Positions 3,489 to 37,150 of a stretch of 38,611 bases of DNA are shown here, one piece after another (position 1 is the first letter of the stretch; every line of letters begins with the position of its first letter). Under the pieces are notes generated by a model. The model was not told the origin of the DNA, made no database searches, and was given only the letters and a program-made list of their open reading frames with translations. The translations under genes were made by a program, and so were the position numbers. The DNA is taken from contig NIVC01001687.1 of the NCBI GenBank assembly GCA_002269645.1, forward strand, positions 1-38,611. Reading direction: 5' to 3'. Source of the DNA: Macrostomum lignano. Lineage: Eukaryota.

Positions 3489-6400
3489 CTGCGGGTGGGA
3501 GTCAGTCATTATAACAAAAGAAAAAAGTGAAATCCTCCGGAAACGAATTTTGCTGCTGATCGGACTGAATTGGTCCTAAGGTCCGTTCATTGGTTAATTA
3601 GCGTCAGTTTGGTCTCAAGCGCTTCATGTTTTGGCACCGTCAGTCAGGCGGATTACAAAAGCCGAACTTCGAAATGTTTTTCCAATTTAGTGTTAAGAAA
3701 GTGAAGAGTTTTAATCCGGCAGGTTTGTTTTCAGGTTAAATCAAACCTTCAAATACTCCGGTCCGCAGGCCACATGCGGCCCGCAGAGCCTCCCTATCCG
3801 GCCCTCGGGTCTTTTGAAGCATCCCAATAGGCAATAGCTATCCGGCCCTCGGTCTTTTGAAGCATCCCAATAGGCAATAGCTATCCGGCCCTCGGTCTTT
3901 TGAAGCATCCCAATAGGCAATAGCTATCCGGCCCTCGGTCTTTTGAAGCATCCCAATAGGCAATAGCTATCCGGCCCTCGGTCTTTTGAAGCATCCCAAT
4001 AGGCAATAGCTATCCGGCCCTCGGGTCTTTTGAAGCATCCCAATAGGCAATAGCTATCCGGCCCGCTCAATGTTTACGAGAGACATCTCTTCTCAGTGCT
4101 CTTCTCTCCTCTCTTCTTTCTTCTCCTTTATTCTCTCGCCTCTCCTTTCTCTTATTTCCCTTTTCTCTTCTTTATTCCCTCTCCTCTCTTCCCTCCTCCG
4201 GCCCACAGTCATTCTCTACGTTCTCTATCTGGCCCTTAAGGTAAAAAAATTGCCAACCCCTGCCATAAGCAAGTTCAATTTTTTTAATTCTTCAAAAGAA
4301 AGTAGTACGATATTTTTATGATATCTTATCTGGGCAAATTCAGTTTCTAGAGAAGTTAATTAAAAGAAAAGAAATTATTATCGGAAGTCAGCATGCACTT
4401 ATACAGCCGATAAGCAGACCTGTTAGCGGAAATCTCCAGGTAGCCGCCGCCGCCGCCACCAGCAGGCTCGCCCTTGCGTCTCCGGCTCGAACCATTCAGA
4501 CCACCGCTGCCGCATTGTACAGGCGACTGCTGATCAGCCAGGTGACGCAACCCCCTGGCTGATGTTGATGCTGTTGCTGCTGCTGCTGCTGCATCATCAG
4601 CAGGGTCTCAAGCTTCTGCAGCCGCCGTCTGGAAGTCTCCAACTCGTGTCGAAGTTTCCATTGCTGAGTCTCGCAAATTGGATTCTTGCATTTGTGGTGC
4701 TTCATCAGGTCTACGGTTTGGTTCACTGACTGCTCAAATGACAATAGCTGGCCCATACTCTGTAAAAGTGACCGGGAATAGACTGATTTGTTTGGCTATT
4801 TATTTAAATCAGATTGAATATCTTTGCGGGAATAACTATACATTAACGAGTCTAGTTCATTGGCACACTTCAGGAACCGATTGATAATGCATTAGTTACC
4901 TACTATTAGCTATACTTTAATGGTATTAAAATAATAATAATTGATTACACCTGCCCTAATGGGCAGTTTTGCAACCGACAGCTCAGCCGCAGCTATTGCG
5001 CGGCGCATCTGAAGGCTGCGTACGGCTGTTCAGTCCAAGGACTGGGGGGTCGCCACACACCCTCAATTACCCCAGCTAATGCTGGCACCCATTTTACAAC
5101 GGGTGAACTGAAGCAATGGTAGATTGTATAGTATGTATTATCCTTGAATAATGATCGCTGTCACGAGTGGCGAAGCCACGAGTGGCTGTCGATCATTATT
5201 CAAGGATAATACATACTACACACGCTCATTGTTCTATGGCCTAAACGAGTCCCGCGATCATTGCGTACCGATCATTCCGTACCGCATAGATGTTTTCATT
5301 GCGTACCGCTTAGAATTTCTCGAAGAACAGGCCATAGACAATTTTTAATCTTGGGTGAAAAGACTTGAGGGAAGAGTTGGAGGTACCATAGACTATGATT
5401 TTCCTTGACTAAAGGCTCTTTAAAGGGTCTGTTTTCTAAGGCAAGACCAGAGGAATTTTACGCTCGTCTTAAAATGGCTTTGATCAATTGGAAACATCTT
5501 CCCTGCGAATCGTTGGATGGAGTTAGCGACAGTGAACTAAGCTTTATTACTGCGCTAAGTTATACTGATCACCACGACGACACCGATCTGCAGAATTTTA
5601 TTGGCTTCCTCACGGATCTGCAGGCTAACTCGGAAGATTATGTTTCCGGAGTCAAATTGCCAGAATTACCTGAGTCTGTGGCTGCCGACATGGACCAAGT
5701 CGAGTTAGACTCGCTACCGCGCTCCACCCAAGAACAAATGATGCAACAGGGAGGTCGATTCATTGCCTTCATGCGCAAGCATACGACTGAAGAAGTACAA
5801 AGCATGACCAACGAGAAGCTAGGAGAGTATCTTCGTTTCTATTATTTTGGACTAAAGAAATCTGATGGAAGTCTGTATTCGCCTGCTACCCTTGTATGCA
5901 TTCGAGCTGGTGTGCAGCGTTACCTAAGAATGATACTCAAGATGCAGACAGACATTATGAATGGGCCAGAGTTTGAAGCGGCTAACAGAATGCTTCGAGT
6001 GAAAGTTCGTCAGTTCAGCGCTGAGGTGGAGTTGTTCAACAGTTTCAACCTATTGAGGACGGAGACCTTCGAAAAATCAGGCAGCATTTTGACAGATCGA
6101 CCGCAGAAAAACTTCAAGATGAGGTAATTTTTTTGTAATTTTCTATACTCTAGGAGAGAGAGGCCAGGAACATTTGGAGTCGATTCGAAACGTGGGACAC
6201 TACTAGATTGTAAAGACGCGGATGGCACAGCTACCTGAAGCTTCCGCCTTTGCCAACTAAAAACCAGTCTTCGGATCCGACAAAGTGCAAGGGCAACGTT
6301 GCAAAGCAGAGTCGCATCTATGGAGCTGAGAGAGATCTTATTCTTCACTACCAGTCATTGTTGCCAGAAGGAGTCGACAATTTCTTTCCACGACCACTCG

Positions 6401-9400
6401 CTAATGCTTCTAATGGAGTCTTGAGGTTTTCTAGTCGCCAAGTGCGTGGCGTCAACTGGTTGTGCTCATTCATGGGACATCTCAGTGAAGTGTGTTCGCT
6501 TTCGCAGCGATACACGAACCATTGCATTCGCGTCACGCGCATCTCGGACCTATATGACAGCGGTCACAGCATGGACGAGATAATGGCCGTTACGGGACAA
6601 CGTAGTGAAGCTACTGTGCGCCGTTACTTATCGCGCAAAAGGGATAGAGCATTGAAAAAGGTCGCGACTGCTGTCAGCACTAGTTTTCAACGTGACGTGA
6701 CTGCTGTCAGCACTAGTCTTCAACGTGACGTGTCGGATGTGAAAAGTCTGCCAGCTGCAAGTGACAGCACGCTGGATAGTTCGTTGACTACACAATTCAA
6801 CAATTTAGCAGGTACTTCGTTTGTTACTTCACCAGCCGGTAGCACAGTGGCCGTTTCAGTAGCGCAACAACAATTGGATGTGAGTACAGCAGTGCGTCAG
6901 CCGATGTTTGCCAACTGTAGCTTTTCTAATTGTACTTTTAATTTATAATAAGTTAGGCTTCGACATTGGACTTCGTATGTGGACAGTGACAAAGTTTGCT
7001 TTTGAGACCACTTTTTCTTCTGAATGATATGTTTGTCAATGCTTAATCCGATCTGAATCTTCTAATTTCTTAAAATCTTAATCTTCCAATGCTAGGAATC
7101 CAAATATCCTACTACTAGGAATCCCACTCTTTCAATTCTAGTAGTCACAATCTTCCAATCTCTTTAATGACACCCTCCTAATCAAATTTATTTCAAAATA
7201 CAAAATTTACGCATAGTTTGCGTTATTATATCATTGTTTGTTGTGCCTGTACGCATTTTTCATATCTATTTATGCCATTCTCAATTGCCTACTGTATCTA
7301 TCGTCACTTTTGTTAAATAAACTGTTAACTGATTATTCACCAAGTTTTGTCTATGGTTTAAATTCGCTTTGGAAGCCTAAAATAATGGCGTTTTTTGGAC
7401 AATCATTAAGACTCGGGTGGGCCATAGAACAATGCAGATTTAAGCGTCTTGCTCAAGGACACAAATTTTCCAGTAGGATCGAGAATCGAACCCCCGACCT
7501 TCACGTCGTGAGTCCGACGCTCTAACCACTGAGCTACGACCTCTTAATAATTATTAATTATTGATATATTCTTGATTAATATATAATGGTATTATTAAAA
7601 TAAAAATAATCAGCATACCGCTATATTCATCTGATTTTACTACCGTTTTTTTTCACACCGCTTTATAAAACTGGCACCAGCGAATAAATTCCGCATTAAA
7701 ATCCAAAGTCAAAGGTGTGCTTATATAGTGCCATGTGCCTCAAATGAAATTTGTTTGAATTATTTCGACAATAAACTCGATATGGCTTGGGCCATCTGCG
7801 CCACCTGAGCAGGCGGTGAAACTGGTTTGTCTTGGCTTTCGAGGCCTCTTGATGGACATGGCGCATGGGAAAGGGAGAACAGGGCCTATTTTAAAGCCTG
7901 GGCTGCAGCTGCGCCTGTCTCCGGAACTGCGACTTCATTCGGGATGTTCAGGCAAACACACTGCCACTCCCTCCCATGAGATGTAGCTTGCATCACGGGA
8001 ATGCTGCTCACCCCCGCCCCTCGAACTGCCTGCCAGTCGGTCTTTTTCTCTTCCCAATTATCCAGCTGACCTCAAAAGCAGGCAGCATTAAATTTATGAG
8101 CCCTCTAGCGTCGCTCCCGCCCTGAGCTCGCCTCCTGCTGCATGGTCGCCCCGCCTCTTATGCCCGAAAGGAAAGGCTCGGGCGGAGTGACTGGGCGGGA
8201 CAGTGGCGGGGAGGGCGAGAGTGCAAGTAGTGACACGGTGGGATGCGGAACTGCTGGTTATGCTAATGAGACTGCCAACCTGGAAGCGCATATTCCCCAG
8301 CGACCGGGCCTCCATCCGCTGCAGCTCAGGGAAAAGCCAGTGAAACTGCAGCCGGCTCTCATCCTTTTTCGGACCCAGATATTGCCAAGTCGACTGTTGC
8401 CGCGAATTCTTCCGGCTTGGGAATAATTACGTGTTAAAATTTGTGAATTTTGTCTCTCTCCGGACCTTTCTAGCCTGTCTGCGCGGGAGCAATGAGTAAA
8501 AGCAGACATGCGCTTTGAATACGAAGGAAAATATTGTATCAGCAAACATCCAAATAGTTTGCGGGCTAGTTGCACCACAAGTTGCGATAGTCTAAAAATC
8601 TTACATGTAAATTAAACAAAGACTAGTGAAAGTTGAAGGGTAGGAACAAAGGACCAGAATAGGTCATTTTTTACTCACTATAGACACTAGCCCGCAGCAG
8701 CCGTACTTGTCGAAATCCTTTAGTCTAGGCCGCATGTAGCGGTAGAACCAGTGCTCCAGCAATAGCAGCAGGCAACACAGAAGCATCCCGCCGATCAACA
8801 GGATGAACGCGCTGATGAAGTTTTTCACGCCCAACGTCTGGTTGGAGTTTCGCAGACGGCCGCTCTGCTGACAGGCGCCCGTGAACCAGTATTTGCTCCA
8901 GCGCTCCAGCAGGCCTAAAAAATTTAGTTTTTGTTTTTATTTTATAGTTAGCTCGACGGGTGAATTTTTTGACAACTACTAGCCTTACTATAGATCAGTC
9001 GACCCGCAACCAGTAAGGAGGAACGCATGCACAACATTGTGCCATGGTTCTGCCTTCATTTCTCTTTCGCGACAAGACCAAAGCCAACTTTGGTACTCTG
9101 ATGCTTTTATAGAGAGTAAAACGTGTTACCACCGAGCTTACTTTGCCACCTCTCAACATAAGTTGGTTTTATCTGCGAGTCTACCCGACCTCTGCTTAGG
9201 CAGCAAAGAACGCACCGTTCTTTCTGTAGATAAGAATCTGACTATCGATGTCGGGCTTCCACTCAGAGCCTTTGGGAAATCCAACTCCGTAGCCAGTCAT
9301 TGAGTACCAGTTACCAACAGTTTTCAGCTTGCAGTCTTTGTCTTTCCCGACCCGGTACTGCAGTACAGTTGCGTCGTAGATGAAGGCGTCAATTTCGCTG

Positions 9401-15319: not shown

Positions 15320-15388
15320 CTCTCTGTTCTGGAAGAGCAAAGAACCAGGCCTGCAGTACTCGTACATTTACTGATGAATGAGGCATAT

Positions 15389-16005
15389 TTCAGCAGATAA
15401 GACACTCTTTCAGCAGATGAGACACTCTTTCAGCAGATGAGACACTCTTTCAGCAGATGAGACACTCTTTCAGCAGATGAGACACTCTTTCAGCAGATGA
15501 GACACTCTTTCAGCAGATGAGACACTCTTTCAGCAGATGAGACACTCTTTCAGCAGATGAGACACTCTTTCAGCAGATGAGACACTCTTTCAGCAGATGA
15601 GACACTCTTTCAGCAGATGTGACACTCTTTCAGCAGATGAGACACTCTTTCAGCAGATGTGACACTCTTTCAGCAGATGAGACACTCTTTCAGCAGATGT
15701 GACACTCTTTCAGCAGATGAGACACTCTTTCAGCAAATATGACACTCTTTCAGCAGATGAGACACTCTTTCAGCAGATGAGACACTCTTTCAGAAAATGA
15801 GACACTCTTTCAGCAGATGAGACACTCTTTCAGCAGATGAGACACTCTTTCAGCAGATGAGACACTCTTTCAGAAAATGAGACACTCTTTCAGCAGATGA
15901 GACACTCTTTCAGCAGATGAGACACTCTTCAGCAGATGAGACACTCTTTCAGCAGATGAGACACTCTTTCAGCAAATGTGACACTCTTTCAGCAGATGTG
16001 ACACT
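15389..16005. repeat. 20-bp minisatellite, about 31 copies
   Basis: Unit ttcagcagatgagacactct with occasional gatgt, aaat and gaaaat variants. Confidence 0.97.
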
Positions 16006-16666
16006 AATTCAAACGTTACAAAAAATCACAATTTTTAATGAAGCCCCCCTCCTCAACCCCCTCCTCAACCGAAAACAAAATATGCTCATATTTGAGCCTC
16101 CTAAACCTAGAATTCGAGACAGAAGAGAAATAAATTTCTGGTTTGGATTGAATCAACTGCGAATCATGGTTTTTCTCAGTTTCTTAGACTACAAGCCAGC
16201 TGTTTCGCATGACAATAAGGCAAACCCAGGCCAACCCTTGATTTGTGCAGGTGGGCAATCAGGTGTAACAGGAGAAAGTGGAATGGGAACGGGAGATATA
16301 TCCCTGCCTCACTAGGAGGTGATGCCTGTCGAATAGGTGCAGAATAAAGTTAAGGGGTGAATTCTCCGCAAGGGAAAGCCAGCTTCTTTGCGTTAACGAT
16401 GAAGCTCTCCGGATATGATTTCGTACACCTGCAGTTCTGTGCCTCACCTAATCCCTAAGTCTCTCGATCCAGCCTCTCCATTCGTATCTTCCCTCCGATA
16501 TCTTCCAGAAAAATTTGGCTTGGCATCGCTACATCCCCGGACTTCCTTATTGAATTTTTTCTTTGCGTCCTGAACACTTTGTTACAGAATAGGAACAACG
16601 TGTACTTTTTAGAAATTAAACCTTGTTCGAGGTTCCATTGAGAAACGCTCAAAAAATTGTTTGAAA

Positions 16667-18363
16667 GGGGAAATCAGGGACTGCATCCAGCTGTTCCAAC
16701 TGGGAAATGAGGGACTGCATCCAGCTGTTCAATTGGGAAATGAGGGACTGCATCCAGCTGTTCCAATTGGGAAATGAGGGACTGCATCCAGCTGTTCCAA
16801 TTGGGAAATGAGGGACTGCATCTAGCTGTTCCAATTGGGAAATGAGGGACTGCATCCAGCTGTTCCAACTGGGAAATGAGGGACTGCATCCAGCTGTTCA
16901 ATTGGGAAATGAGGGACTGCATCCAGCTGTTCCAATTGGGAAATGAGGGACTGCATCTAGCTGTTCCAATTGGGAAATGAGGGACTGCATCCAGCTGTTC
17001 CAATTGGGAAATGAGGGACTGCATCTAGCTGTTCCAATTGGGAAATGAGGGACTGCATCTAGCTGTTCCAATTGGGAAATGAGGGACTGCATCCAGCTGT
17101 TCAATTGGGAAATGAGGGACTGCATCCAGCTGTTCAATTGGGGAAATGAGGGACTGCATCCAGCTGTTCCAATTGGGAAATGAGGGACTGCATCCAGCTG
17201 TTCCAATTGGGAAATGAGGGACTGCATCCAGCTGTTCCAATTGGGAAATGAGGGACTGCATCCAGCTGTTCCAACTGGGAAATGAGGGACTGCATCCAGC
17301 TGTTCCAATTGGGAAATGAGGGACTGCATCCAGCTGTTCCAATTGGGAAATGAGGGACTGCATCCAGCTGTTCCAATTGGGAAATGAGGGACTGCATCCA
17401 GCTGTTCCAATTGGGAAATGAGGGACTGCATCCAGCTGTTCAATTGGGAAATGAGGGACTGCATCCAGCTGTTCCAATTGGGAAATGAGGGACTGCATCC
17501 AGCTGTTCCAATTGGGAAATGAGGGACTGCATCCAGCTGTTCAATTGGGAAATGAGGGACTGCATCCAGCTGTTCCAATTGGGAAATGAGGGACTGCATC
17601 AGCTGTTCCAATTGGGAAATGAGGGACTGCATCCAGCTGTTCCAATTGGGAAATGAGGGACTGCATCCAGCTGTTCCAATTGGGAAATGAGGGACTGCAT
17701 CCAGCTGTTCCAATTGGGAAATGAGGGACTGCATCCAGCTGTTCCAATTGGGAAATGAGGGACTGCATCCAGCTGTTCCAATTGGGAAATGAGGGACTGC
17801 ATCCAGCTGTTCCAATTGGGAAATGAGGGACTGCATCCAGCTGTTCCAACTGGGAAATGAGGGACTGCATCCAGCTGTTCCAATTGGGAAATGAGGGACT
17901 GCATCCAGCTGTTCCAATTGGGAAATGAGGGACTGCATCCAGCTGTTCCAATGGGGAAATGAGGGACTGCATCCAGCTGTTCCAATTGGGAAATGAGGAA
18001 CTGCATCCAGCTGTTCCAATTGGGAAATGAGGGACTGCATCTAGCTGTTCCAATTGGGAAATGAGGGACTGCATCCAGCTGTTCCAATTGGGAAATGAGG
18101 GACTGCATCCAGCTGTTCCAATTGGGAAATGAGGGACTGCATCCAGCTGTTCCAATTGGGAAATGAGGGACTGCATCCAGCTGTTCCAACTGGGAAATGA
18201 GGGACTGCATCCAGCTGTTCCAATTGGGAAATGAGGGACTGCATCCAGCTGTTCCAATTGGGAAATGAGGGACTGCATCCAGCTGTTCCAATTGGGAAAT
18301 GAGGGACTGCATCTAGCTGTTCCAATTGGGAAATGAGGGACTGCACCTAGCTGTTTCTGGGAA
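16667..18363. repeat. 34-bp minisatellite, about 50 copies
   Basis: Unit tccaattgggaaatgagggactgcatccagctgt with 1-bp indel and SNP variants. It explains all the MQSLISQLEQLDAVPHFP... ORFs. Confidence 0.97.
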
Positions 18364-18884
18364 ATTTAAGATTCTTCCTTTGAAGAGCTCACTCTAAATT
18401 TTAGTTTGAATATTTTATGGATAAAATACTATTATTTTTTGAATCTCAGCTCAGTTGAGTAGCCAGCCCCGGCCCTAGCTCAGAATTTCATTTAATTTCA
18501 TTGCCTGCCAACTGGTCTCTGCTCTGCCAAGGAGTGGGGCGGCTCCTCCAACTGCAGATCTTCTTTTAGCCAGTTGAGGTCCGCAGCGCCACTCTGCCAA
18601 ATTGAACGCCGCCGAGTCGGTGGCCACCTGCTGCAGTGCTGGGCCACTCGACTTCAGCTGCTGGCCGAATCACCAACCCACCCCCCCCCCAAGGCCAAGT
18701 GAGTCCCTACATGGAGACCCACCACAACCAAAACTTGGAGTAAGCAACTCCCAATTTTCTGACAATTCTTTTCTGACTTTTCTTAGGCTTTTTTTACACA
18801 CTAGTGATAGACAGGTGTGGTAATGACAGAATGGAGTTTTGAATATACACACAAAATGAAACTAGTTATATCAGAGTTCGACAA

Positions 18885-19765
18885 ACTCCAGCCTCTTTAT
18901 CCGGCCCTCGGGTCCTTTGAAACTTCACAATAGCAAAACGGCCCGCTCAGGGCTTGTGTCTCTTCTCAACTCTCTTCTCTAATCTCTCCTCTCCTCTCCT
19001 CTCCTCTCCTCTCTCTCCTCTCTCTCCTCTCCTCTCCTCTCCTCTCCTCTCCTCTCCTCTCTCTCTCCTCTCCTCTCCTCTCCTCCTCTCCTCTCCTCTC
19101 TCTCTCTCCTCTCCTCTCCTCTCTCTCCTCTCCTCTCCTCTCCTCTCCTCTCCTCTCCTCTCCTCTCCTCTCTCTCCTCTCTCTCCTCTCTCTCCTCTCC
19201 TCTCCTCTCCTCTCCTCTCCTCTCCTCTCCTCTCCTCTCCTCTCCTCTCCTCTCCTCTCCTCTCCTCTCTCTCTCCTCTCCTCTCCTCTCCTCTCCTCTC
19301 CTCCTCTCCTCTCCTCTCCTCTCTCTCCTCTCCTCTCCTCTCCTCTCTCTCTCCTCTCCTCTCCTCTCCTCTCTCTCCTCTCCTCTCCTCTCCTCTCCTC
19401 TCTCCTCTCCTCTCCTCTCCTCTCCTCTCCTCTCCTCTCCTCTCCTCTCCTCTCCTCTCCTCTCTCTCCTCTCCTCTCCTCCTCTCTCTCCTCTCCTCTC
19501 CTCTCCTCTCCTCTCCTCCTCTCCTCTCCTCTCCTCTCCTCCTCTCCTCTCCTCTCCTCTCTCCTCTCCTCTCCTCTCTCCTCTCCTCTCCTCTCCTCTC
19601 CTCTCCTCTCCTCTCCTCTCCTCTCCTCTCCTCTCCTCTCCTCTCCTCTTCTCTTCTCTCCTCTCCTCTCCTCTCTTCTATTCTCTTCTCTCCTCTTCTC
19701 TTCTCTACTCTCCTCTCTTCTCCTCTCCTCTCCTCTCCTCTTCTCTCCTCTCCTCTCCTCTCCTC
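18885..19765 (+). repeat. Roughly 800-bp (CTCTC)n polypyrimidine tract grown out of the CT-rich interior of a hAT-like MITE copy
   Basis: tatccggccctcgggtcctttgaaacttcacaatagcaaaacggcccgctca (about 18898-18949) matches the MITE interior at 36320-36362 and 4010-4068, and is followed directly by pure C/T sequence to about 19765. Confidence 0.9.
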
Positions 19766-20323: not shown

Positions 20324-20979
20324 AGTCCAATCTCAATGAAATCCAATCTCACTGAAGTCCAATCTCACTAGAGTCTAATCTCTCTGGAGTCCGATCTCAC
20401 TGGAGTCCAATCTTACTGGAGTCCAATCTCACTGGAGTCTAATCTCACTGGAGTCCAATCTCACTGGAGTCCAATCTCACTAGAGTCCAATCTCACTGAA
20501 ATCCAATCTCACTGGAGTCCAATCTCACTAGAGTCTAATCTCTCTGGAGTCTAATCTCTCTGGAGTCTAATCTCACTGGAGTCTAATCTCACTGGAGTCT
20601 AATCTCTCTGGAGTCCGATCTCACTGGAGTCCAATCTCACTGGAGTCCAATCTCACTGGAGTCTAATCTCACTGGAATCTAATCTTACTAAAATTCAATC
20701 TCACTAAAATCCAATCTCACTAAAAGTCCAATCTCACTAAAATCCAATCTCACTGGAGTCCAATCCCACTAAAATCCAATCTCACTAAAATCCAATCTAA
20801 CTAAAATCCAATCTCACTAAAATCCAATCTCACTGGAGTCCAATCCCACTAAAATCCAATCTCACTAAAATTCAATCTCACTGGAGTCCAATCCCACTAA
20901 AATCCAATCTCACTAAAATCCAATGTCACTGGAGTCCAATCTCACTAAAGTCCAATCTCACTAAAATCCAATCTCACTG
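20324..20979. repeat. 16-bp minisatellite, about 40 copies
   Basis: Unit tggagtccaatctcac (tggag at 20401, 20417, 20433, 20449); the taaaatccaatctcac variant dominates the 3' third. Confidence 0.95.
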
Positions 20980-21627: not shown

Positions 21628-23725
21628 ATTCGGAAACACAAGCGCCCGTGTGTTTATTGTTTGATTCCAAGCACAAGCATCCGTGTGTTTATTGTTTGAT
21701 TCCAAACACAAGCACCCGTGTGTTTATTGTTTGATTCCAAACACAAGCACCCGTGTGTTTATTGTTTGATTCCAAGCACAAGCACCCGTGTGTTTATTGT
21801 TTGATTCCAAGCACAAGCACCCGTGTGTTTATTGTTTGATTCCAAGCACAAGCACCCGTGTGTTTATTGTTTGATTCCAAACACAAGCACCCATGTGTTT
21901 ATTATTTGATTCCGAGCACTAGCACCCGTGTGTTTATTTTTTGATTCCAAGCACAAGCACCCGTGTGTTTATTGTTTGATTCCAAACACAAGCACCCGTG
22001 TGTTTATTGGTTGATTCCAAGAACAAGCACCCGTGTGTTTATTGTTTGATTCCAAACACAAGCACCCGTGTGTTTATTGTTTGATTCCAAACACAAGCAC
22101 CCGTGTGTTTATTGTTTGATTCCAAACACAAGCACCCGTGTGTTTATTGTTTGATTCCAAACACAAGCACCCGTGTGTTTATTGTTTGATTCCAAACACA
22201 AGCACCCGTGTGTTTATTGTTTGATTCCAAGCACAAGCACCCGTGTGTTTATTGTTTGATTCCAAGCACAAGCACCCGTGTGTTTATTGTTTGATTCCAA
22301 ACACAAGCACCCGTGTGTTTATTTTGATTCCAAGCACAAACACCCGTGTGTTTATTGTTTGATTCCAAGCACAAGCACCCGTGTGTTTATTGTTTGATTC
22401 CAAACACAAGCACCCGTGTGTTTATTGTTTGATTCCAACACAAGCACCCGTGTGTTTATTGTTTGATTCCAAGCACAAGCACCCGTGTGTTTATTGTTTG
22501 ATTCCAAACACAAGCACCCGTGTGTTTATGTTTGATTCCAAACACAAGCACCCGTGTGTTTATTGTTTGATTCCAAACACAAGCACCCGTGTGTTTATTG
22601 TTTGATTCAAACACAAGCACCCGTGTGTTTATGTTTGATTCCAAAGCACAAGCACCCGTGTGTTTATTGTTTGATTCCAAGCACAAGCACCCGTGTGTTT
22701 ATTGTTTGATTCCAAAGCACAAGCACCCGTGTGTTTATTGTTGATTCCAAGCACTACACCCGTGTGTTTATGTTTGATTCCAAGCACAAGCACCCGTGTG
22801 TTTATTGTTTGATTCCAAACACAAGCAGGTGTGTTTATGTTTGATTCCTGAGCACAAGCGAGGTGTGTTTATGTCTGATTCCGAGCACTAGCACCCGTGT
22901 GTTTATGCCCGATTCCGAGCACTAGCACCCGTGTGTTTATGCCCGATTCTGAGCACTAGCACCCGTGTGTTTATGCCCGATTCCGAGCACTAGCACCCGT
23001 GTGTTTATGCCCGATTCCGAGCACTAGCACCCGTGTGTTTATGCCCGATTCCGAGCACTAGCACCCGTGTGTTTATGCCCGATTCCGAGCACTAGCACCC
23101 GTGTGTTTATGCCTGATTCCGAGCACTAGCACCCGTGTGTTTATTGTTTGATTCCAAACACAAGCGAGGTGTGTTTATGCCCGATTCTGAGCACAAGCGA
23201 GGTGTGTTTATGCCCGATTCTGGGCACTAGCACCCGTGTGTTTATGCCCGATTCCGGCACTAGCACCCGTGTGTTTATGCCCGATTCCGAGCACTAGCAC
23301 CCGTGTGTTTATGCCCGATTCCGAGCACTAGCACCCGTGTGTTTATGCCCGATTCCGAGCACTAGCACCCGTGTGTTTATGCCTGATTCCGAGCACAAGC
23401 GAGGTGTGTTTATTGTTTGATTCCAAACACAAGCGAGGTGTGTTTATGCCTGATTCCGAGCACTAGCACCCGTGTGTTTATGCCTGATTCCGAGCACAAG
23501 TGAGGTGTGTTTATTGTTTGATTCCAAACACAAGCGAGGTGTGTTTATGCCCGATTCTGAGCACAAGCGAGGTGTGTTTATGCCCGATTCTGGGCACTAG
23601 CACCCGTGTGTTTATGCCCGATTCCGGGCACAAGCACCCGTGTGTTTATGCCCGATTCCGAGCACAAGCACCCGTGTGTTTATGCCCGATTCCGAGCACA
23701 AGCACCCGTGTGTTTATGCCTGATT
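21628..23725. repeat. 35/34-bp minisatellite, about 60 copies, two subtypes
   Basis: 5' subtype caagcacccgtgtgtttattgtttgattccaaaca (35 bp); 3' subtype ctagcacccgtgtgtttatgcccgattccgagca (34 bp); transition near 22830-22880. Confidence 0.96.
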
Positions 23726-24380: not shown

Positions 24381-24665
24381 GGGGTTTTAGCCTAGTGGTT
24401 AGAGCGTCGGACTAACAAAACTAAAAGGTCGGGGGTTCGATTCCCGATGCAACTCCGAACAATCTGTGTCCTTAAGCAAGACACTTAACTCTGCATTGCT
24501 TCAGTTCACCCAGCTGTAAAATGGGTGCCAGCATTAGCTGGGGTAATTGAGGCTGTGTGTGGTGACCCCCCAGTCCTTGGACTGAACAGCCGAACGCAGC
24601 CTTCAGATGCGCTGCGCAATAGCTACGGCTGAGCTGTCGGTTGCACATCTGGCCCCATCTGCCCA
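24381..24665 (+). mobile_element. Uninterrupted tRNA-derived CORE-type SINE
   Basis: A box tagcctagtggttagagcg; B box ggttcgattccc; CORE-like tgtgtccttaagcaagacacttaac...cagctgtaaaatggg. Co-linear with both halves of the split copy at 4930-5118 and 7430-7543. Confidence 0.88.
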
Positions 24666-25189: not shown

Positions 25190-25475
<286 letters not shown>

Positions 25476-26061: not shown

Positions 26062-27282
<1,221 letters not shown>

Positions 27283-29018: not shown

Positions 29019-31043
29019 ATGCAGTCACCTGTCAACGGAAGCGACTCCACGTCGAATTCGACAAGTCTTCCCGGGTACAGCAGGCTGTACATCGCAGTGC
29101 GGGCCGTCACCATTCCCGCAGCAGCCACCGGCCTGATGCTCAGCTGCCTGTCGCTGACGCTGCTGGTCCGCAAGTACCTGCGCAGCCGGGAGGTGTTCGA
29201 CGTCGGCCTCATCCTGATGCAGCTGGCCCACGTCAACTACTGCCTGGCCACCTGCGGCTACATGCCGTTCGACCTGGCGCTGCTCATGTCGGAGCACACT
29301 TTAGAGGCGTCACTGGCGAATACATTGTTCGATGTGAGCTGGCTCGATGGCTTTATCAACTACTCGTAATTGCATAATCTCATTGTGCTTTTTTATTTCA
29401 GCACCTAGAGAAGCAGCATCGCATAGTATAGGATGCCAAAAAGAGCTGAAAAGTTTAAGCAGATTTTGGAGCTCCCTCCAAGCAGATCAGAACAACATTT
29501 ACGCTTGCAGATCTTAAGAAGACTTTGGCGCCTACAATGTGTTAATTTCAGCCATAGAAGTATCTCAGCTAATTTCCAAAGAGAAGCATCTTTGTTTTAC
29601 TGTCTCATCTAGTTGAAGTAAATTGAGATTAGGAATCGTTGCCTCAATACGGATTTTCCTTGGATGCCTAGCAAATCAGCGATTGACCTGAGAGGGTTCA
29701 TGGTTACCTCCCTCATGTCCCTGCGGTTGAGTCCAAGCAGGGTCAACGCGGGACTTCGCTTTCGTACAGGTGTGCAGCTATCATCCGATTAACAACTGCG
29801 TGACAACTTGAAGCTTTACGCAAGAAACTGTCTAATTAAACTTGGAAAGAGGATTAGGCAAATGTGATTGATATAGTTCAGAGTTTCTTCTGGATCTGAC
29901 GGGCAGAAGATTTTCCCAAAGGAACATGAGCGGCAGCCATAGTCATGAATAGGTCACGAGTCACGGCAGCCGGGTCACTTATGTATTAATAATCTCGGAG
30001 TTCCCTGCGTTAGGCCGTCAAAAAAGGCTGCGAACTTGACTATTGGCTATGACTGTCACGGCGTTGTTGCGAGAAAACCCTATGTTGTATGCAAAATTTC
30101 TAAGAAAGTAATTAACACTTTCAACCCTTTTATGTTGAAGACAAATACTCAGCAAGTCTTTGATTGTTTTAGAGCTTCTGCCGCACCTCAAACTGTTCTC
30201 TCTCAGGTGAGCTACTGCTGGGTGTCGTTCAGCGTGGCCGTGAAGAACATGTGGACGGCCTGCATCAGCGTGTTCCGCTGTCTGGCCACCTTCAAGCCCA
30301 TCGGCTTCCGCCGCTGGCTGACGCGCCGCTTCCAGCTGTGCGGCTTCGGCGTCCTGCTGCTGGTCGCGGCCGCCGCCGGGCCCGGCACCTTCGCCGCGTG
30401 GCGTCTGGCAGCCGGCGGCAGCGAGCGGTTCCTGGTGGACGTGATGCTGCCGCTGACGAGGACGCCTCAGACTTACCTGCCCGTGCCGCTGATCCTGCTG
30501 GCCTCCGGCGTCACCGCCGCTCAGTTGGCTGTTGCCAGGAGCAACCAGCCTGGTGAGACAGCCGACACCGCCGCAAACGCCAATGGAACTGCGAACTCGG
30601 AGGCTCGCAGTTGGAGCACGGCCACCCGCATCGTGCTGGTGCTGGCGATCTCATTCTCCATCTTTGAGCTGCCTGGCGCCATCTTCATCACATTTGAGAT
30701 TTACCAGCTGCTTCCAGACTGGATGGTGCCGGTGACCGACCTGCTGGTGACCATCGACAGCGCCTGCAGCTTTTTCGTGTTCTACGCGTTCAGCGCCAAC
30801 TTCCGTCGCTTGGTTAGGCAGCTGGTGAAGGAGCCCACAGCTGCCGGTGCGGACCGCCCGGTTCCCGCCGATACCCGAGCCGCCGCTCAGCGTCGAAACC
30901 GACTTCGCACCACTAGCAGCCGAACAGGCAGCAGCAGCAGCGTCGACGGAGGCGGCAGCAGTCGTCAGAAGCTGCTCGGTCCGCGCGTCCCGACAATGTC
31001 GGTGCAGTCACAGCAGCCCATTGCGCTGCGCGATTTGCAGTAG
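29019..31043 (+). CDS. Rhodopsin-class (class A) orphan GPCR, peptide-receptor/Srw-like; exons 29019-29333 and 30207-31043, 383 aa
   Basis: Seven hydrophobic segments. TM3 ends SVFRCLATFKP (DRY equivalent); TM6 RIVLVLAISFSIFELP; TM7 TDLLVTIDSACSFFVFYAFSANFR. N-terminal NxS/T sequons; phase-0 GT-AG intron. Confidence 0.87.
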
Positions 31044-32030
31044 TGTGCTTGGAATTATTTATGAAGCTTAATTTAATCCTTTGAGTAGTCCAGGGAATAC
31101 AGCTAAAATTCGATTACTATTTCACTGTTATCCCTTTGTGCTGATGGACTGTCATTATCCAAAGAATTTGACAAATAAATAAAGAAAAATATACTTTTGT
31201 TTCCCCGCGTTGCATTCTGAAACATCCCGTGTGCTTATCTTGTGATTTTCTGTGTTTCATTCTGAAAAAATCTGACTTGCCTGAAGGAAAACCTCGCTCA
31301 CAGGTCGTAGTAAGTTTACGATCGAGAAGCCTCATGTTCCCAATTCATTTTTGAGAATTTATGCAGCCTTGCTTATTGCGGCTTCCATGAAATCAGATTT
31401 TATGTACATGTGGATTGTAGGTTGATTTTCAAGTCTTTTCAGTCGATTCAGCAGTGATGAATGGAGTGGCAGCTCGGAGACGGCGGGTGGCACTGATTGG
31501 CTTGTGACCAAGTGTTCCGATAGTTGACTGGGCTCGTGCAGTTTTATTGCACTCTTACTATTCAGTAGCTGGTAAGCCAAAAAAAAACAACGAAGCGTGC
31601 CACCAGCCGGCTCCAAGCCGGTTAATAAATAGTATGCAAAGAAAATGGGATGCGGGTCAAACCGGCCCGAGCGAACACACAAAAAAGAACCCCGCGAGCA
31701 CCCCACCCCAGCCCAGCCAATCAAAATACACGCTGGGTAAGGCTCCACGAGGGGGGTAGAAAAAGAGGGGGGCTGCCGGCCCAGCCAGCCAATCCGCGCA
31801 CGCGCAGGCTGCCCAAAACCAGAACCGGTCTAAACCAGCTCAAACCAGCTCGCCAGATCAGAACCAACTAAGGCGGCAGACTGGGCGGTTGGCATGCACC
31901 AAAAAAGTGCGAGGAGGTCATTGTGGCGCAGGCCACAACATAGCTAGCAAGTTTAGTGCCAATATATATAAGGCCTTAACAACCAAATTAAGTCATTAAA
32001 AAATTAACCAGATGTTGAACAATGTATGAC

Positions 32031-33150
32031 TATCAAGAGGTCACGATTCACACACAACTTACCGCGTAAGGCAGTTGCCTTACCGCGTCTCGGCCTACGA
32101 TGAGCCAGTAAGTGGCATAGAAAAAAATGCGAGCGAAGCGAGAATTTTTTTCTATGGTGCTTACTTTTGCGAAATCGTCGGCCTCGACGCTATGGCAGTT
32201 GTGTGTGAATCGTGAACTTTCGATAATGGAATTGTGTCTAGTTTCGTCCAAAAACCAATTCAAAACGGCTAGGACACAACTTCCCAGACGGGAATTGTTC
32301 ACTGAGCGATTCTAGGGATTTGTGTCATAGGCATTTTCCACTTGGCGCAAGCCAAATGATGGCCATAGACTAAACGTCTGGAACGAAAAGTTAAGCGGAA
32401 CAGTCTGAAATTACCATAGACGAAACATGTTAAATGAAGTTGTGGTCTTATAAGCTGGAACTCTGCAGCAGAGGATACATGTTCCTGTTTCTTCTGTTTG
32501 CCCTAACCTCTATTCATGCCACTCATACGAATGATAAATTGGTCGAATTTGCCGATTGAAAGCATTGACGGCTTGAATGGAAATGAGGTCAACTTTCTCA
32601 GCGACTTGAGTATGGGTGGACGTGACGAGGCGGATGACGAAGAGTTGATGGAGTTCATCCGATTCATTGAATGCGGTAACGATGATGCTCTGCCACCACT
32701 GCCAAGCGAATAAGAGGCTTGCCCCGAGGATCCTATGCGGAACAAACCATGCAATTCGGCCGATGTGAGTGTAATTATTGTCGATTCTAGCTCTACTCAT
32801 CGATTATTGCGGAACAATTGGTCCACTTTCATTATGCCCACGTTACGGCCGTTTTCGTACATGTATACAATCTGTTTATTCAGCTTTGTTGTATTGAATA
32901 AAAAATATCCTCGCAAACGCATTGATACAGGAATATACAGATTGCTTATCTGCAAATGGGTATATCCAAATATAACCCGTTGGGAATATCCAAAGATGGG
33001 GGGCGGCTTGACCATAGACTATTCGCAGATAAGCAATCTGTTGTATTCCTGTTTCGATGCCTGAAAGGCGCGCAAAAATTTACTTAGTTCACAATTTCCG
33101 TCGACGCAATCATTTGTGGCTCAAACGAAACTAGACACAATTGCTATAGA
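32031..33150 (+). mobile_element. Non-autonomous Crypton-like derivative (about 1.1 kb); exact ends uncertain
   Basis: Left hairpin with 18-bp perfect outer arms (32041-32058 vs 32198-32215) and 13-bp inner arms, centred on gcgagcgaagcgag. An 18-bp perfect inverted repeat (32230-32247 vs 33125-33142), ggccatagac at 32361, and a short ORF homologous to the recombinase N-terminus. Confidence 0.78.
32516..32713 (+). pseudogene. Truncated 65-aa ORF homologous to the N-terminus of the Crypton-like recombinase
   Basis: MINWSNLPIESIDGLNGNEVNFLSDLS...DDEELMEFIRFI...LPPLPSE aligns by eye with MALINWKHLPCESLDGVSDSELSFITALS...DDTDLQNFIGFL...LPELPES (5474 onward). Confidence 0.75.
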
Positions 33151-33265
33151 TAATTAATTCGTGTACACGCCTTTCTGTGACGAGACATACCTCTGGTCTA
33201 GAGATGTATCGCAGTATGTATTACAGAAACTATAAAAAACAGTATTTAAAAGCACATCTCAGAAC

Positions 33266-33655
33266 AGTTCCAGAGACACATCACAGCAGAGTTCCGGAGA
33301 CACATCACAGTAGAGTTCCGGAGACACATCACAGCAGAGTTCCGGAGACACATCACAGTAGAGTTCCGGAGACACAGCACAGTAGAGTTCCGGAGACACA
33401 TCACAGTAGAGTTCCGGAGACACAGCACAGTAGAGTTCCGGAGACACAGCACAGTAGAGTTCCGGAGACACATCACAGTAGAGTTCCGGAGACACATCAC
33501 AGTAGAGTTCCGGAGACACAGCACAGTAGAGTTCCGGAGACACAGCACAGTAGAGTTCCGGAGACACAGCACAGTAGAGTTCCGGAGACACAGCACAGTA
33601 GAGTTCCGGAGACACAGCACAGTAGAGTTCCGGAGACACATCACAGCAGAGTTCC
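33266..33655. repeat. 24-bp minisatellite, about 16 copies
   Basis: Unit agagttccggagacaca(g/t)cacagt. Explains the SRVPET(H/Q)H ORF. Confidence 0.95.
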
Positions 33656-35921
33656 AAGGACACGCTGCACATTTCTAGAGACACGTCGCAAAACCGTTTG
33701 AGGGACATATCGCAGCACAACTCCAGAGACTTAAATAGAAAGCTTTTGATACTGGTAAGGTATCTATTGAGATTGTCTATAAAAACATCATTAGTATCAG
33801 TTTAATTACGTACTTTCTATCGCTAGCAGCTACAGCTGACAAAGTGCGCAAGGCTTGTTTAGATTAATAAATATTCGTCCTTAGACTAAAAGCTAAAGCA
33901 AGTTGCTTCACGAAAAATTCCAATAAATATCAAGTCGCTTTATAAGCGTTATATTAGCTGTCTTGTGCCTTTCAGGTAAGCTACATCAAAGACAAAGCGC
34001 AATATTCAAGACTTCGGAAATTCGGTTAACGAATTGCGACGCTGATCTGCTGCATCATTATTCCCAACTAAGAAGATGCGAGTAAATGTAATCTGACGAA
34101 TCACCCCGGAACTGTGAAAGGCTTGTTGCGAGTTTGAGGTTGCAGTACCCGCTATCATTTTCTACCTCCTCATGATGCAGCTTAGTGCCCAGCTGCCAAT
34201 TATACTCGTACTAAACAATTACAATATCGTATGCTAATAATAATTATTAAATTATAACCCTTGTTGATGAAATGTATAGCGGCCCTGACTTTCTAATCGT
34301 CATCTAAACTCCTAAAGAATTTGGCGAGAAAAGGGGAAAAATATGAAGCCAAAGCACAGCTTCCTGCTTGAGCGATTTTTTAGGGAGAGAAAAACTTAAA
34401 GTGCAAACTTAGCAATCAAAGACCTAGGCAGCAAGAGCGTCGTACAGAGGCAAATGCGTCACTAAAAGTTATTTATTAAAGCGCAAAACCCAAACCGCGC
34501 TCACGGACGCATAACATCAAGGGGTGAATCGAAGGGGGGCATTTTTGAGCATTTTTTTACAAGTAATACGGAAGATGACTCAGATTTTCACAATCAGTTC
34601 GTACTCCGAGCACATGTCAGCGAGCGGTTGGATGATTTGCTAAGGGAACTTCGCGGTTTACCAGCCTTGAACGGCAAGAACGGCTACCAGGCTTGACTAC
34701 CAGTCCGAAACTTTGAGATAACGCACCTGCAGCTAGGTCTTGAAAATAGAATACCGATAGAAAACCGGTCACTGTACTATTAGTAGTATTTCCAAAGCAC
34801 TGAATAATCAAGTAGAAGGACACTGCTGCTGCACTTCCAAATCGGGTCGGGAGAATTTGACGTTTTTCTCACCTAATCAGGATTCTTGTATTGAGGTCCT
34901 GACATTCTGCAATTGGATTTTGCAGATTCCGCAGGATCTGCATCAAATACTGTGTGTGTCATCAAAGTTTCTCATTATCTCAAAAAAGGAAACAGACTGA
35001 CTCAGAATTTACATTTCGTAATTCAAAATTAACATGAATACGTTTATTACTCTGAAAGGCAAGGAGGGATGCCGCAGGGCACCTCTGAAAGATTAGATTA
35101 TTTTAATCTGACTGACATTCAACTGAGTCAGAAGCACACTGGACTGCACTGTCCTCTCTCCGCCGCCATCGGAGTACACATTGTACTGTATTTTCAAGAG
35201 TTTAATTCTTCGTAAGGTACTCATTTGGCACAGCAAGGGTGCAGGAGTTCTGATACAGCGTTCTGATGCGAAAATCTTCAAAGTCGTGCAATTCAAACAC
35301 GTGTACTACACATGTACACATGTAAATTTTGCATCACCATGTATTTAGCTGTACAATGTACATGCTTACGATCGTATTTCACCTTTAGCATTTGAATGAA
35401 AACATGATGGAAGTACATGATGGACTTCTTTAAATCACTTGCATTAGTGATTGGGGAGGTGGTTTTTGATGCCATAGACGTTTTTGAATCTCTGGGCTTT
35501 TGGGCCGTTTCGGTATGGCCTGCGGTGCAGGCCTTTGGCCTTCAAATGGTTAATCGGTCACAAGGATCTTTGTCACAAGTAGATTTGTTAAAAGGATCTT
35601 GTCGCAGGATTCATGCCTAGAGGGGCCAACCCGGCCAATACCTATGGTGCAGGGTAACGGGGTCAGCTCAATAAACATGACTGCCTGTCTCGTCGCCGGT
35701 TGCAGGTCGACTGTCACCTGTGATTTGCAGTGGCAATCTAAAAGACAAAACCTACTGCGGTACAGCGTTAAAAGCCATTAGCTCGTACAGCAATCCGAAG
35801 TCGGAGCAAAGCAAATGAGACGCCAAAATCGTTCGGCTGAACAGAGTTCTTCCATCAAAAGAGATTATCGTGCCGCTTGTACAGTAGAAAGTATAAAAAT
35901 AATGTTTACTAATGTAGCCTC

Positions 35922-36027
35922 CATTCTAGAAACTTCTGCGCTCTCCCCATACACCAAAAATAGTAACATTCTAGAAACTTCTGCGCTCTCCCCATACACC
36001 AAAAATAGTAACATTCTAGAAACTTCT
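35922..36027. repeat. 45-bp tandem duplication (2 copies plus a partial copy)
   Basis: cattctagaaacttctgcgctctccccatacaccaaaaatagtaa at 35922 and 35967, partial at 36012. Confidence 0.9.
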
Positions 36028-36559: not shown

Positions 36560-37150
36560 TAAATAATGGCCATAGAAACTCGTGCGTTTATATGTATACA
36601 AGTGCATTAACTGCCGCTAATTTGCATTAAAGTAAGTTTTGACAAAGACAATCGGGCGTTAAATGTCATTAACTGCCCGCTAATTTCGATATTTCTTTAC
36701 TGCAAGCGGGCATAAATGTAGTCTATGGCATTAAAAGGCAAGAATAAAAAGTGCCCAGCGGGCACAAAGGTCATGGTACAATCGGGTATACCATCGCGTT
36801 CTAGTTGATTTAGCTCTTCAATCACGTCGTCTGGAATGTCGAGAATCTCTTCTGACTCGATCTTGTCCGCGAATTCCTTGTTCAATTCCTCCAAATACCG
36901 GCTGTTTGACTCCGCTCAAATCCAGGCCAGCTCTTCGGTCGACATACCAGAAACAACTTTTCTAGGTAAATTTGAATAATTGATTAAGTGATTCATCATG
37001 TTCAGAGCGCGGAAGCAGAATGCTAACAGATTAAAATGTATCCTGCCGTTCTTATTCCTTTTACAGTGAATCTAAGCCCATAAATACTTATGCCTATTTG
37101 TCTATGGTCCTAAATTGACAAATGAGGAGAAAGAATGGCCATAGACACTT
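36560..37150 (-). mobile_element. Degenerate Crypton-like derivative (third copy); boundaries approximate
   Basis: Minus-strand remnant ORF from 36999; GGCCATAGA-type motifs at 36568, 37100-37110 (inverted) and 37137. No terminal hairpin was found. Confidence 0.6.
36697..36999 (-). pseudogene. Remnant of the recombinase N-terminus with an in-frame TGA at 36916-36918
   Basis: MMNHLINYSNLPRKVVSGMSTEELAWI*AESNSRYLEELNKEF...IPDDVIEELNQLERDGIPDCT; similar to LINWKHLP...GVSDSELSFI and DMDQVELDSLPRST of the 5474 ORF. Confidence 0.65.

What the first reader, a model, noticed from the sequence alone, without database searches (positions are those of the whole stretch)
4930..7543. Crypton-like tyrosine-recombinase transposon splitting a SINE: the window contains both the filled site and an empty-site reference
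Seen: SINE 3' half ...ctgaag-CAATG | 2311 bp insert | CAATG-cagatt... SINE 5' half. The intact SINE at 24381 reads, in reverse complement, ctgaag-CAATG-cagagt, so the insertion has exactly one extra CAATG. Established: Cryptons are tyrosine-recombinase DNA transposons described with short (4-6 bp) terminal direct repeats, thought to reflect recombination through a circular intermediate. Inference: this is a precisely delimited, full-length metazoan Crypton in an NMDA-receptor intron. The CAATG is probably a recombination core carried by the element and matched to the target, not a classical TSD.
Basis: partly seen in the sequence, partly recalled or inferred. Interest (0 to 1): 0.85.

Follow-up and report, generated by a model that had tools for sequence, protein, structure and literature searches.

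The report
Crypton transposon inserted in a SINE
A 2.3-kb Crypton-type mobile element, moved by a tyrosine recombinase, sits inside a short repeat in an intron of a flatworm NMDA-receptor gene, and its relatives share a hairpin plus inverted-copy structure next to an AAT crossover point that I did not find described in the papers I could search.

Summary
A tRNA-type SINE (4961-5118 and 7430-7543) is split by a 2311-bp insert (5119-7429), and CAATG lies on both sides. An intact SINE copy at 24388-24654 has a single CAATG.

The insert encodes a CryptonA/DUF3504-type tyrosine recombinase. Its closest hits are Macrostomum lignano proteins. An intact relative models as a Cre-like fold. All catalytic residues are present, but four single-base deletions break the frame; there is no nonsense codon.

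It lies in the intron after the M4 exon of a GluN2-like gene, in antisense orientation.

The short repeat is a crossover microhomology carried by the element, not a target-site duplication:
- In seven related families the right end always finishes in xAAT.
- Only AAT (3-5 bp) is shared with the target.
- Two public contigs show a right end joined to a left end through one core.

One feature looks new. After the core comes a 100-200-nt hairpin, whose apex on the ORF strand reads GA, G+C stem, GNA or GTTA loop, stem, GA. An inverted copy of the right terminus follows. The joined ends would therefore form a palindrome of about 160 bp around the crossover.

Verdict: a Crypton as proposed, and a structural variant of a known kind.

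The parts
4961..5118 (-). Tail-side part of the split SINE, ending in the left CAATG (5114-5118).
   Evidence: 93% identical to 24654-24494; alignment.
7430..7543 (-). Head-side (tRNA-like) part of the split SINE, starting with the right CAATG (7430-7434).
   Evidence: 82% identical to 24498-24388; alignment.
24388..24654 (-). Intact paralogous SINE, used as the empty-site reference. It has a single CAATG.
5119..7429 (+). Element E1: a CryptonA-type tyrosine-recombinase transposon copy of 2311 bp.
5114..5231 (+). Left-terminal hairpin module. CAATG pairs with CATTG at the base. The arms are 5125-5157 and 5190-5222 (33 nt, 97% complementary). The apex, 5165-5181, reads GAGTGGCGAAGCCACGA.
   Evidence: DNA fold -40.3 kcal/mol, z = -12.9. 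12 compensatory pairs against the L001 element. Apex motif found.
5227..5251 (-). Internal inverted copy of the right terminus, including the core (CATTGTTCTATGGCC...).
   Evidence: 25 nt, 88% complementary to 7410-7434. 15/15 exact for the terminal 15 nt.
7410..7434 (+). Right terminus GACTCGGGTGGGCCATAGAACAATG.
   Evidence: The ...AAC-AAT ending recurs in families L010, L011 and L005-8, and contig L013 stops just after GAACAAT.
5332..5392 (+). Two direct CCATAGAC boxes (5332-5339 and 5386-5393) between the hairpin and the ORF. Further boxes lie at 5233 (-), 7350 (-) and 7422 (+).
   Evidence: 18 CCATAGA sites in the window: 6 in E1, 4 in E2 and 5 at 35.4-37.2 kb, around E3. L001 has the same layout.
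5474..6948 (+). Tyrosine-recombinase reading frame of 492 codons. It is broken by 1-nt deletions after 6025, in the T-run 6128-6134, in the G-run 6194-6196 and at about 6231. There is no in-frame stop.
32021..33141 (+). E2: an internally deleted Crypton of a related family. Hairpin 32031-32225 with a GCGAAGC centre. An inverted copy at 32230-32247 matches the right terminus 33125-33142. Boundaries were set by analogy; no empty site is available.
36700..36996 (-). E3: an N-terminal fragment of a third, more distant Crypton family.
   Evidence: tblastn with P0008, P0010 and P0012, E = 1e-11 to 4e-13.
4750..8678 (-). Intron of a GluN2-like NMDA-receptor gene that holds the SINE and E1. It lies between the M4 exon (about 8936-8679) and the next exon (starting at 4749).

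Best explanation
E1 (5119-7429) is a copy of a CryptonA-type DNA transposon. Its only gene encodes a Cre-like tyrosine recombinase.

The most likely history is as follows. The element existed as a joined (circular) form in which the right end ...GGCCATAGAAC-AAT was followed by GGTAGATTG... The recombinase exchanged strands between that AAT-centred core and a matching CAATG in a SINE. This leaves one copy of the core on each side without duplicating target DNA.

In the joined form the crossover lies inside the stem of a palindrome of about 160 bp. The palindrome consists of the right terminus, the left-terminal hairpin and the inverted copy of the right terminus. I infer that this palindrome, together with the repeated CCATAGAC boxes, is the recombinase's recognition site.

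Shown here: the insertion limits, the family of the protein, the shared architecture, and junction contigs in relatives. Inferred: the circular intermediate, the exact cleavage positions and the role of the hairpin.

This copy is either inactivated by four 1-nt deletions or mis-assembled at those four sites.
For: Filled and empty sites differ by the insert plus one CAATG.

Protein family:
- Closest hits are M. lignano Tyr-recombinase proteins.
- The profile finds 13,202 cluster representatives.
- 29 of 34 relatives hit DUF3504 and 29 hit Phage_integrase.
- The catalytic R, K, HxxR and Y are conserved.
- The modelled fold matches Cre, IntI, Xer and Tn1549 Int.

No second gene and no reverse transcriptase.

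The core belongs to the element:
- The inverted internal copy includes it in E1, L001, E2, L004, L010, L011 and L012.
- Only AAT is shared between junction and target in five insertions. The base before AAT differs between left and right in L010 and L011.
- L005 reads ...GCGAACAAT|ATAACAATAATATA-hairpin. That is the right end of L011 joined to the left end of L011 through one AAT.
- L003 reads ...CCATAGTCTAT|GGTAGATG.

The hairpin is under selection:
- z = -9 to -14 in five families.
- 12 compensatory pairs between E1 and L001.
- The central 56 bp are 89% identical while the coding sequence is 65% identical.
- The apex motif occurs once per element and always on the ORF strand.
- The joined ends fold at -60.5 and -55.8 kcal/mol.

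Literature: CryptonF-1_cRei ends in CACCG, targets CAYCG, and inserts and excises cleanly (PMC9977147).
Against: - Only E1 has an empty-site reference. The limits of the other elements were set by analogy.
- No second copy of E1's own family could be retrieved, so I could not test whether its flanks vary.
- A 3-nt invariant core is shorter than the 6-8-bp overlap usual for tyrosine recombinases.
- The junction contigs could come from head-to-tail tandem copies rather than from circles.
- The Pfam hits of E1's own pieces fall below the curated cut-offs.
- The relatives are homologous, so agreement between them is not fully independent evidence.
Confidence: 0.8

Rival explanations
1. The CAATG pair is an ordinary 5-bp target-site duplication made by staggered cuts. 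The enzyme could be the encoded protein acting differently, or a transposase supplied in trans.
For: One filled/empty pair cannot by itself separate a TSD from a shared core.
Against: - The two ends are not inverted repeats of each other, and no DDE gene is present.
- The same AAT ends seven families, and the internal inverted copy contains it.
- The left and right copies differ outside AAT in L001, E2, L010 and L011.
- Junction contigs carry a single core.
Confidence: 0.08
2. It is a domesticated Crypton-derived host gene of the ZMYM, QRICH1 or KCTD1 type at a fixed locus.
For: Weak QRICH1-domain hit, E = 1e-3. The family is related to DUF3504.
Against: - It interrupts a SINE that has an empty paralogue.
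- It lies antisense in an intron.
- Its frame is broken.
- The catalytic residues are kept, whereas DUF3504 genes lack most of them (PMC3212892).
- Two further fragments of related families lie in the same 38 kb.
Confidence: 0.01
3. The left hairpin is an unrelated foldback or MITE insertion that happens to lie next to the recombinase gene.
For: It is a self-contained palindrome of about 100 bp.
Against: - It occupies the same position, just after the core, in E1, L001, E2, L010 and L011 (in L004 the contig begins at the hairpin), and is followed in each by the inverted copy of that family's own right end.
- Its centre is more conserved than the coding sequence.
Confidence: 0.03
4. It is a remnant of a DIRS- or Ngaro-type tyrosine-recombinase retrotransposon.
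For: An inverted terminal sequence with an internal complementary copy recalls the ITR/ICR layout of DIRS (PMC13465315).
Against: - There is no RT, RNase H or methyltransferase coding.
- The element is 2.3 kb, and its relatives are 1.9-2.0 kb with a single ORF.
- The protein groups with DUF3504/CryptonA.
Confidence: 0.02

Closest known systems
CryptonA elements of animals (Kojima and Jurka 2011, PMC3212892)
   Same: - A single gene for a tyrosine recombinase related to DUF3504.
- No C-terminal GCR1_C domain.
- About 2 kb in length.
- Non-autonomous deletion derivatives exist (E2).
   Different: That study reported no terminal repeats, direct or inverted, in animal Cryptons. Here the ends are defined: an AAT core, a left-terminal hairpin, an inverted copy of the right end and repeated subterminal boxes.
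CryptonF-1_cRei of Chlamydomonas (PMC9977147)
   Same: The element ends in a short motif that matches the target (CACCG against CAYCG). Insertion leaves the motif on both sides, and excision is clean.
   Different: It belongs to a different Crypton group. The passages I read mention no hairpin or inverted copy for it. Activity was observed there but not here.
Integron attC sites with IntI, and the CTX-phage attP with XerCD
   Same: A tyrosine recombinase acts beside an imperfect hairpin whose imperfections are conserved and specific to one strand. IntI is among the structural matches.
   Different: This is a resemblance only. Nothing here shows single-stranded or cruciform substrates. Sizes and sequences are unrelated.
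Tn916/Tn1549 integrases
   Same: A circular intermediate and a Cre-like catalytic fold. Little homology is needed at the crossover.
   Different: Those are bacterial conjugative elements with coupling sequences taken from the flanks. Here a fixed AAT is kept.
DIRS1-type retrotransposons
   Same: A tyrosine recombinase, and a circle junction that falls inside complementary terminal and internal sequences.
   Different: DIRS elements encode a reverse transcriptase and are much longer.

Membership tests
Crypton (tyrosine-recombinase DNA transposon) | Encodes a tyrosine recombinase with the catalytic R...HxxR...Y residues. | tested here: met
   - R (GERG), K (TKN), H and R (NHCIR) and Y (RRY) are present in E1 and conserved in 34 relatives.
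- The Cre-like fold was shown for relative P0002.
- E1's own Pfam hits are below the cut-off, and its frame has four 1-nt deletions.
Crypton (tyrosine-recombinase DNA transposon) | No reverse transcriptase or other transposition enzyme. | tested here: met
   There is one long frame only, and the other ORFs have no Pfam hit. The element is 2311 bp.
Crypton (tyrosine-recombinase DNA transposon) | No terminal inverted repeats and no long terminal direct repeats. | tested here: met
   The left end GGTAGATTG and the right end ...CCATAGAACAAT are unrelated. The inverted copy of the right end lies 108 bp inside the left end, not at it.
Crypton (tyrosine-recombinase DNA transposon) | A short direct repeat at both ends that is alike in all copies. 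| tested here: met
   CAATG/CAATG in E1, TAATG/TAATT in L001, CAATG/CAATT in E2, GAAT/CAAT in L011 and TAATG/CAATG in L010. This was tested across families, not among copies of one family.
Crypton (tyrosine-recombinase DNA transposon) | Moves through an excised circle by site-specific recombination. | not testable with these tools
   Indirect evidence only: contigs L005 and L003 hold right-end/left-end junctions with one core. Tandem copies would look the same.
CryptonA group | Recombinase related to DUF3504, with no C-terminal DNA-binding domain. | tested here: met
   29 of 34 relatives hit PF12012 and 29 hit PF00589; 16 hit the QRICH1 N-terminal domain. No further domain was found.
Domesticated DUF3504 genes (ZMYM2-4, QRICH1, KCTD1, KIAA1958) | Loss of most of the catalytic tetrad, and a fixed host locus. 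| tested here: not met
   The catalytic residues are kept. The element is inserted in a SINE that has an empty paralogue.
DIRS/Ngaro retrotransposons | Reverse transcriptase and RNase H next to the recombinase. | tested here: not met
   None found in E1, in L001 or in the roughly 2-kb relatives.
attC-like folded recombination sites | Recombination of a folded single strand that is recognised by its shape. | not testable with these tools
   There is only a structural hint: a strand-specific GA/GNA apex.

The most novel reading that the evidence does not exclude
In this branch of animal Cryptons the recombination site is recognised as a structure. The ORF-strand hairpin has a cGNAg or cGTTAg apex and conserved tandem G.A mismatches. 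It would be extruded as a cruciform or folded in single-stranded DNA, and the recombinase would read it there, as IntI reads attC. That would be a structure-specific tyrosine-recombinase transposition pathway in animals.
Probability: 0.2. Interest if true: 0.8.

Novelty: new variant of a known kind. Interest (0 to 1): 0.55.

Why it matters
Crypton transposition has never been reconstituted, and the ends of animal Cryptons were reported as featureless. This locus gives base-exact limits for one animal Crypton. Together with its relatives it gives a defined candidate recombination site: an AAT core inside a palindrome of about 160 bp with a conserved apex.

Intact relatives occur in Macrostomum lignano, a laboratory flatworm. 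The mechanism could therefore be tested directly by looking for the circle junction and mapping the cleavage sites. Whether the hairpin is needed could be tested in the same way.

It also adds context for how the DUF3504 domains of ZMYM and QRICH1 proteins once bound DNA.

Tried and rejected
- Pfam on E1's own ORF pieces gave only sub-threshold hits, so classification had to go through relatives.
- ARAGORN found no tRNA in the SINE head.
- A profile scan of viral contigs could not run, because no column block was conserved enough.
- I looked for similarity between junction and target beyond the core. It seemed present by eye, but the ungapped comparison of five insertions shows only AAT plus 0-2 neighbouring bases. 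I dropped the idea.
- An alternative left limit for E2, at the AAT near 32003, was suggested by AGATGTTGAA shared with L003. I set it aside because the hairpin base pairs ACAAT at 32019 with ATTGT at 32231, as in E1. It is not excluded.
- I first read the common start of contigs L005-L008 as an element end. L011 shows that it lies inside the element.
- L012 has only a weak hairpin, z = -2.8.
- L013-L017 are too short to show ends.
- No hairpin was found beside E3.
- No further copy of E1's own family could be reached with the collections on hand.
Full report
**1. The observation**

The window reads ...gggtgaactgaag-CAATG-gtagattgtatag... at 5100-5131 and ...gggccatagaa-CAATG-cagatttaagcg... 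at 7418-7446. The stretch between the two CAATG copies is 5119-7429, which is 2311 bp.

I joined 4930-5118 to 7435-7543. The result is colinear with the reverse complement of 24388-24654, with 88.8% identity over 267 columns. In a three-way alignment the two flanks overlap in exactly the five columns CAATG. The intact copy reads ctgaag-CAATG-cagagt.

ARAGORN does not call the SINE head a tRNA.

**2. What the insert encodes**

The long frame runs from 5474 to 6948 but changes frame four times. With one placeholder base after 6025, in the T-run 6128-6134, in the G-run 6194-6196 and at about 6231, the frame is open for 492 codons with no stop.

All four lesions are single-base deletions, two of them in homopolymer runs, and there is no nonsense codon. 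They may be real decay or indel errors of a long-read assembly. I cannot tell which.

Evidence on the protein family:
- The stitched product aligns end to end with proteins of 449-495 aa.
- The closest hits are from Macrostomum lignano. P0001 is 77-84% identical. P0002 is 55-61% identical and is named 'Tyr recombinase domain-containing protein'.
- Pfam hits of E1's own pieces are weak: QRICH1 domain E = 1e-3 and Phage_integrase E = 0.05.
- A profile of twelve relatives finds 13,202 cluster representatives at E <= 1e-3.
- Of 34 full-length relatives, 29 hit DUF3504 and 29 hit Phage_integrase.
- R, K, HxxR and Y are invariant or nearly so, and all are present in E1.
- An AlphaFold model of P0002 (mean pLDDT 69) matches Cre over about 335 columns at E = 1e-9, with target TM 0.6. 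It also matches IntI, XerA, XerH, Tn1549 Int and lambda Int.
- E1 contains no other gene.

This is a CryptonA-type element in the sense of Kojima and Jurka (PMC3212892).

**3. Host and position**

Exons of a GluN2-like NMDA-receptor subunit lie on the minus strand. Exon 10809-10468 matches GluN2A residues 612-721 at E = 1e-29. An S2 exon lies near 9429-9199 and the M4 exon near 8936-8679.

The best database hit is a M. lignano gene model. It is about 82% identical in the aligned blocks. It joins ...GCCGLVSI directly to SMGQLLSFEQSVNQ..., which in the window starts at 4749 behind a ttttacag acceptor.

The intron is therefore 4750-8678. It holds the SINE and E1, and the recombinase frame is antisense to the gene. 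The source is M. lignano or a close relative; I could not decide between them.

**4. Anatomy of the element**

Immediately after the left core come six bases (GTAGAT) and then a hairpin. Its arms are 5125-5157 and 5190-5222, 33 nt each and 97% complementary. As single-stranded DNA, 5114-5231 folds at -40.3 kcal/mol with z = -12.9, and the left CAATG pairs with CATTG at 5227-5231.

Next comes an inverted copy of the right terminus: 5227-5251 against 7410-7434, 25 nt and 88% complementary. The terminal 15 nt, GGCCATAGAACAATG, match exactly.

CCATAGA(C) boxes occur at 5233 (-), 5332 (+), 5386 (+), 7350 (-) and 7422 (+). Of the 18 such sites in the window, 6 lie in E1, 4 in E2 and 5 at 35.4-37.2 kb, around E3.

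**5. The same architecture in relatives**

- **L001.** The intact M. lignano copy (NIVC01002014) has, in order: TAATG; GGTAGATT; a hairpin at 4617-4720 (z = -10.1); an inverted copy at 4723-4745 of its own right end 6547-6569 (96% complementary); and the same layout of boxes.
- **E1 against L001.** The central 56 bp of the hairpin are 89% identical, while the coding sequence is 65% identical. Of 45 predicted pairs, 12 are kept through changes on both sides.
- **E2.** The window itself holds a second, internally deleted element at about 32021-33141. It has a 200-nt hairpin (z = -8.9) and an exact 18-nt inverted copy of its right end.
- **E3.** A fragment of a third family lies at 36700-36996 on the minus strand.
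- **Distant families.** These are about 30% identical in protein and come from public short-read and metagenome assemblies. L004, L010, L011 and L012 each carry an inverted copy of the right end, and L004, L010 and L011 carry it directly after a strong hairpin; in L012 the hairpin is weak (z = -2.8).
- **Right ends.** All of them finish in xAAT: ...GAACAAT, ...GTAACAAT, ...TGATAAT and ...ACATAAT.

**6. Core or duplication**

For five insertions I compared the predicted junction (right end plus left end) with the target (left flank plus right flank). Only AAT is always shared, with 0-2 neighbouring bases:
- C-AAT-G in E1
- T-AAT in L001
- AC-AAT in E2
- AAT alone in L011
- AAT-G in L010

In L010 and L011 the base before AAT differs between the left and right copies. 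This fits a crossover at AAT and does not fit a duplication of target bases.

The inverted internal copy carries the core as well, so the core is element sequence.

Two contigs show the junction itself:
- L005 reads ...GCGAACAAT|ATAACAATAATATA followed by the hairpin. That is the right end of L011 joined through a single AAT to the left end of L011.
- The sister contig L006 leaves the same right end into unrelated sequence.
- L003 reads ...CCATAGTCTAT|GGTAGATG. Here GGTAGAT is the left end shared with E1 and L001.

These junctions could come from circles or from head-to-tail tandems.

The literature agrees with a core model. Goodwin's model was supported by live CryptonF insertions that end in CACCG and target CAYCG (PMC9977147).

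**7. What may be new**

Kojima and Jurka found no terminal repeats, direct or inverted, in animal Cryptons. A curation guide gives a short direct repeat as the only distinguishing feature of Cryptons (PMC8969392). A full-text search for Crypton together with hairpin found no description of such a structure. Repbase could not be consulted.

Joining the ends of E1, or of L001, gives a continuous palindrome of about 160 nt. The folds are -60.5 and -55.8 kcal/mol, with z = -12.9 and -15.1, and the crossover sits in the stem.

The apex follows one pattern: GA, a G+C stem of 5-7 bp, a GNA or GTTA loop, the stem again, GA. A strict search finds it once each in E1, L001, L004, L005, L009 and L011, always on the strand of the reading frame. 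A shuffled window gives 0.12 hits. E2 (GC-GAA-GC) and L010 (GCGC-GTA-GCGC) are looser versions on the same strand.

From my own knowledge, cGNAg triloops and cGNNAg tetraloops are among the most stable DNA hairpin loops, and tandem G.A pairs are stable mismatches. A plain duplex binding site would not need them. This suggests, but does not show, that the ORF strand folds or that a cruciform forms.

**8. Mechanism proposed**

The element is excised as a circle. The recombinase binds the palindrome and the subterminal boxes, and it exchanges strands at AAT with a target that carries AAT and a few matching neighbours.

Shown: the limits, the family, the architecture, and junctions in relatives.

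Inferred: the circle, the cleavage positions and the role of the hairpin.

**9. Verdict**

The element is a member of a known class. Its terminal architecture, shared by a widespread branch of that class, appears undescribed and gives a concrete handle on how Cryptons recombine.

Noticed in passing
window 32021-33141: E2 is a second, internally deleted Crypton of a related family. It keeps about 110 N-terminal codons, a 200-nt hairpin with a GCGAAGC centre and an exact 18-nt inverted copy of its right end. It is a candidate non-autonomous element.
   Followed up: partly
window 36700-36996 (minus strand), with boxes at 35472-37145: E3 is an N-terminal fragment of a third Crypton family (like P0008 and P0012). 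Five CCATAGA sites lie across 35.4-37.2 kb around it, with TTCCCGGGCG-like boxes nearby. No hairpin was found.
   Followed up: partly
L005 about 1720-1835; L003 1673-1700: Public short-read contigs hold a right end joined to a left end through one core. This is the sequence expected of a Crypton circle or of a head-to-tail tandem.
   Followed up: partly
window 6663-6728: A 33-bp tandem duplication, 94% identical, lies in the C-terminal tail of the recombinase frame. It adds 11 residues that relatives lack.
   Followed up: no
window 4918-4928 and 7584-7594: The 11-nt direct repeat TAATGGTATTA lies outside both ends of the split SINE. It may be the SINE's own target duplication, but about 40 A/T-rich bases separate it from the SINE head.
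   Followed up: no
window 15378-16011, 16668-18365, 18960-19765, 20324-20979, 21634-23725, 25190-25475, 26062-27282, 33253-33730: At least eight satellite-like tandem arrays lie in 38 kb. The one at 26062-27282 is 100% identical between copies offset by multiples of 52 bp.
   Followed up: no
window 30036-31043 (+); 29069-29412 and 38167-38502: An ORF of 335 aa hits the Srw-type 7TM chemoreceptor family. A 340-bp segment just upstream of it is repeated at 90% identity near the end of the window.
   Followed up: no
P0001 (UniRef A0A1I8H8Y0, M. lignano): This 617-aa gene model, named 'PIPK domain-containing protein', is an E1-family Crypton copy read partly out of frame and fused to unrelated sequence. 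It is probably an annotation artefact.
   Followed up: partly
L002 1413-1503: The P0003 family has a short intron before the conserved C-terminal F-x-NC-x-F motif. E1 and L001 have none.
   Followed up: no
L004, L005-L011, L009 subterminal regions: Each distant family has its own repeated 10-12-nt box: GCAATAATGCCCG in L004 and TTCCGGGCG in L005 and L011. The boxes stand where the Macrostomum families have CCATAGAC, as expected of protein-binding sites that co-evolve with the recombinase.
   Followed up: no
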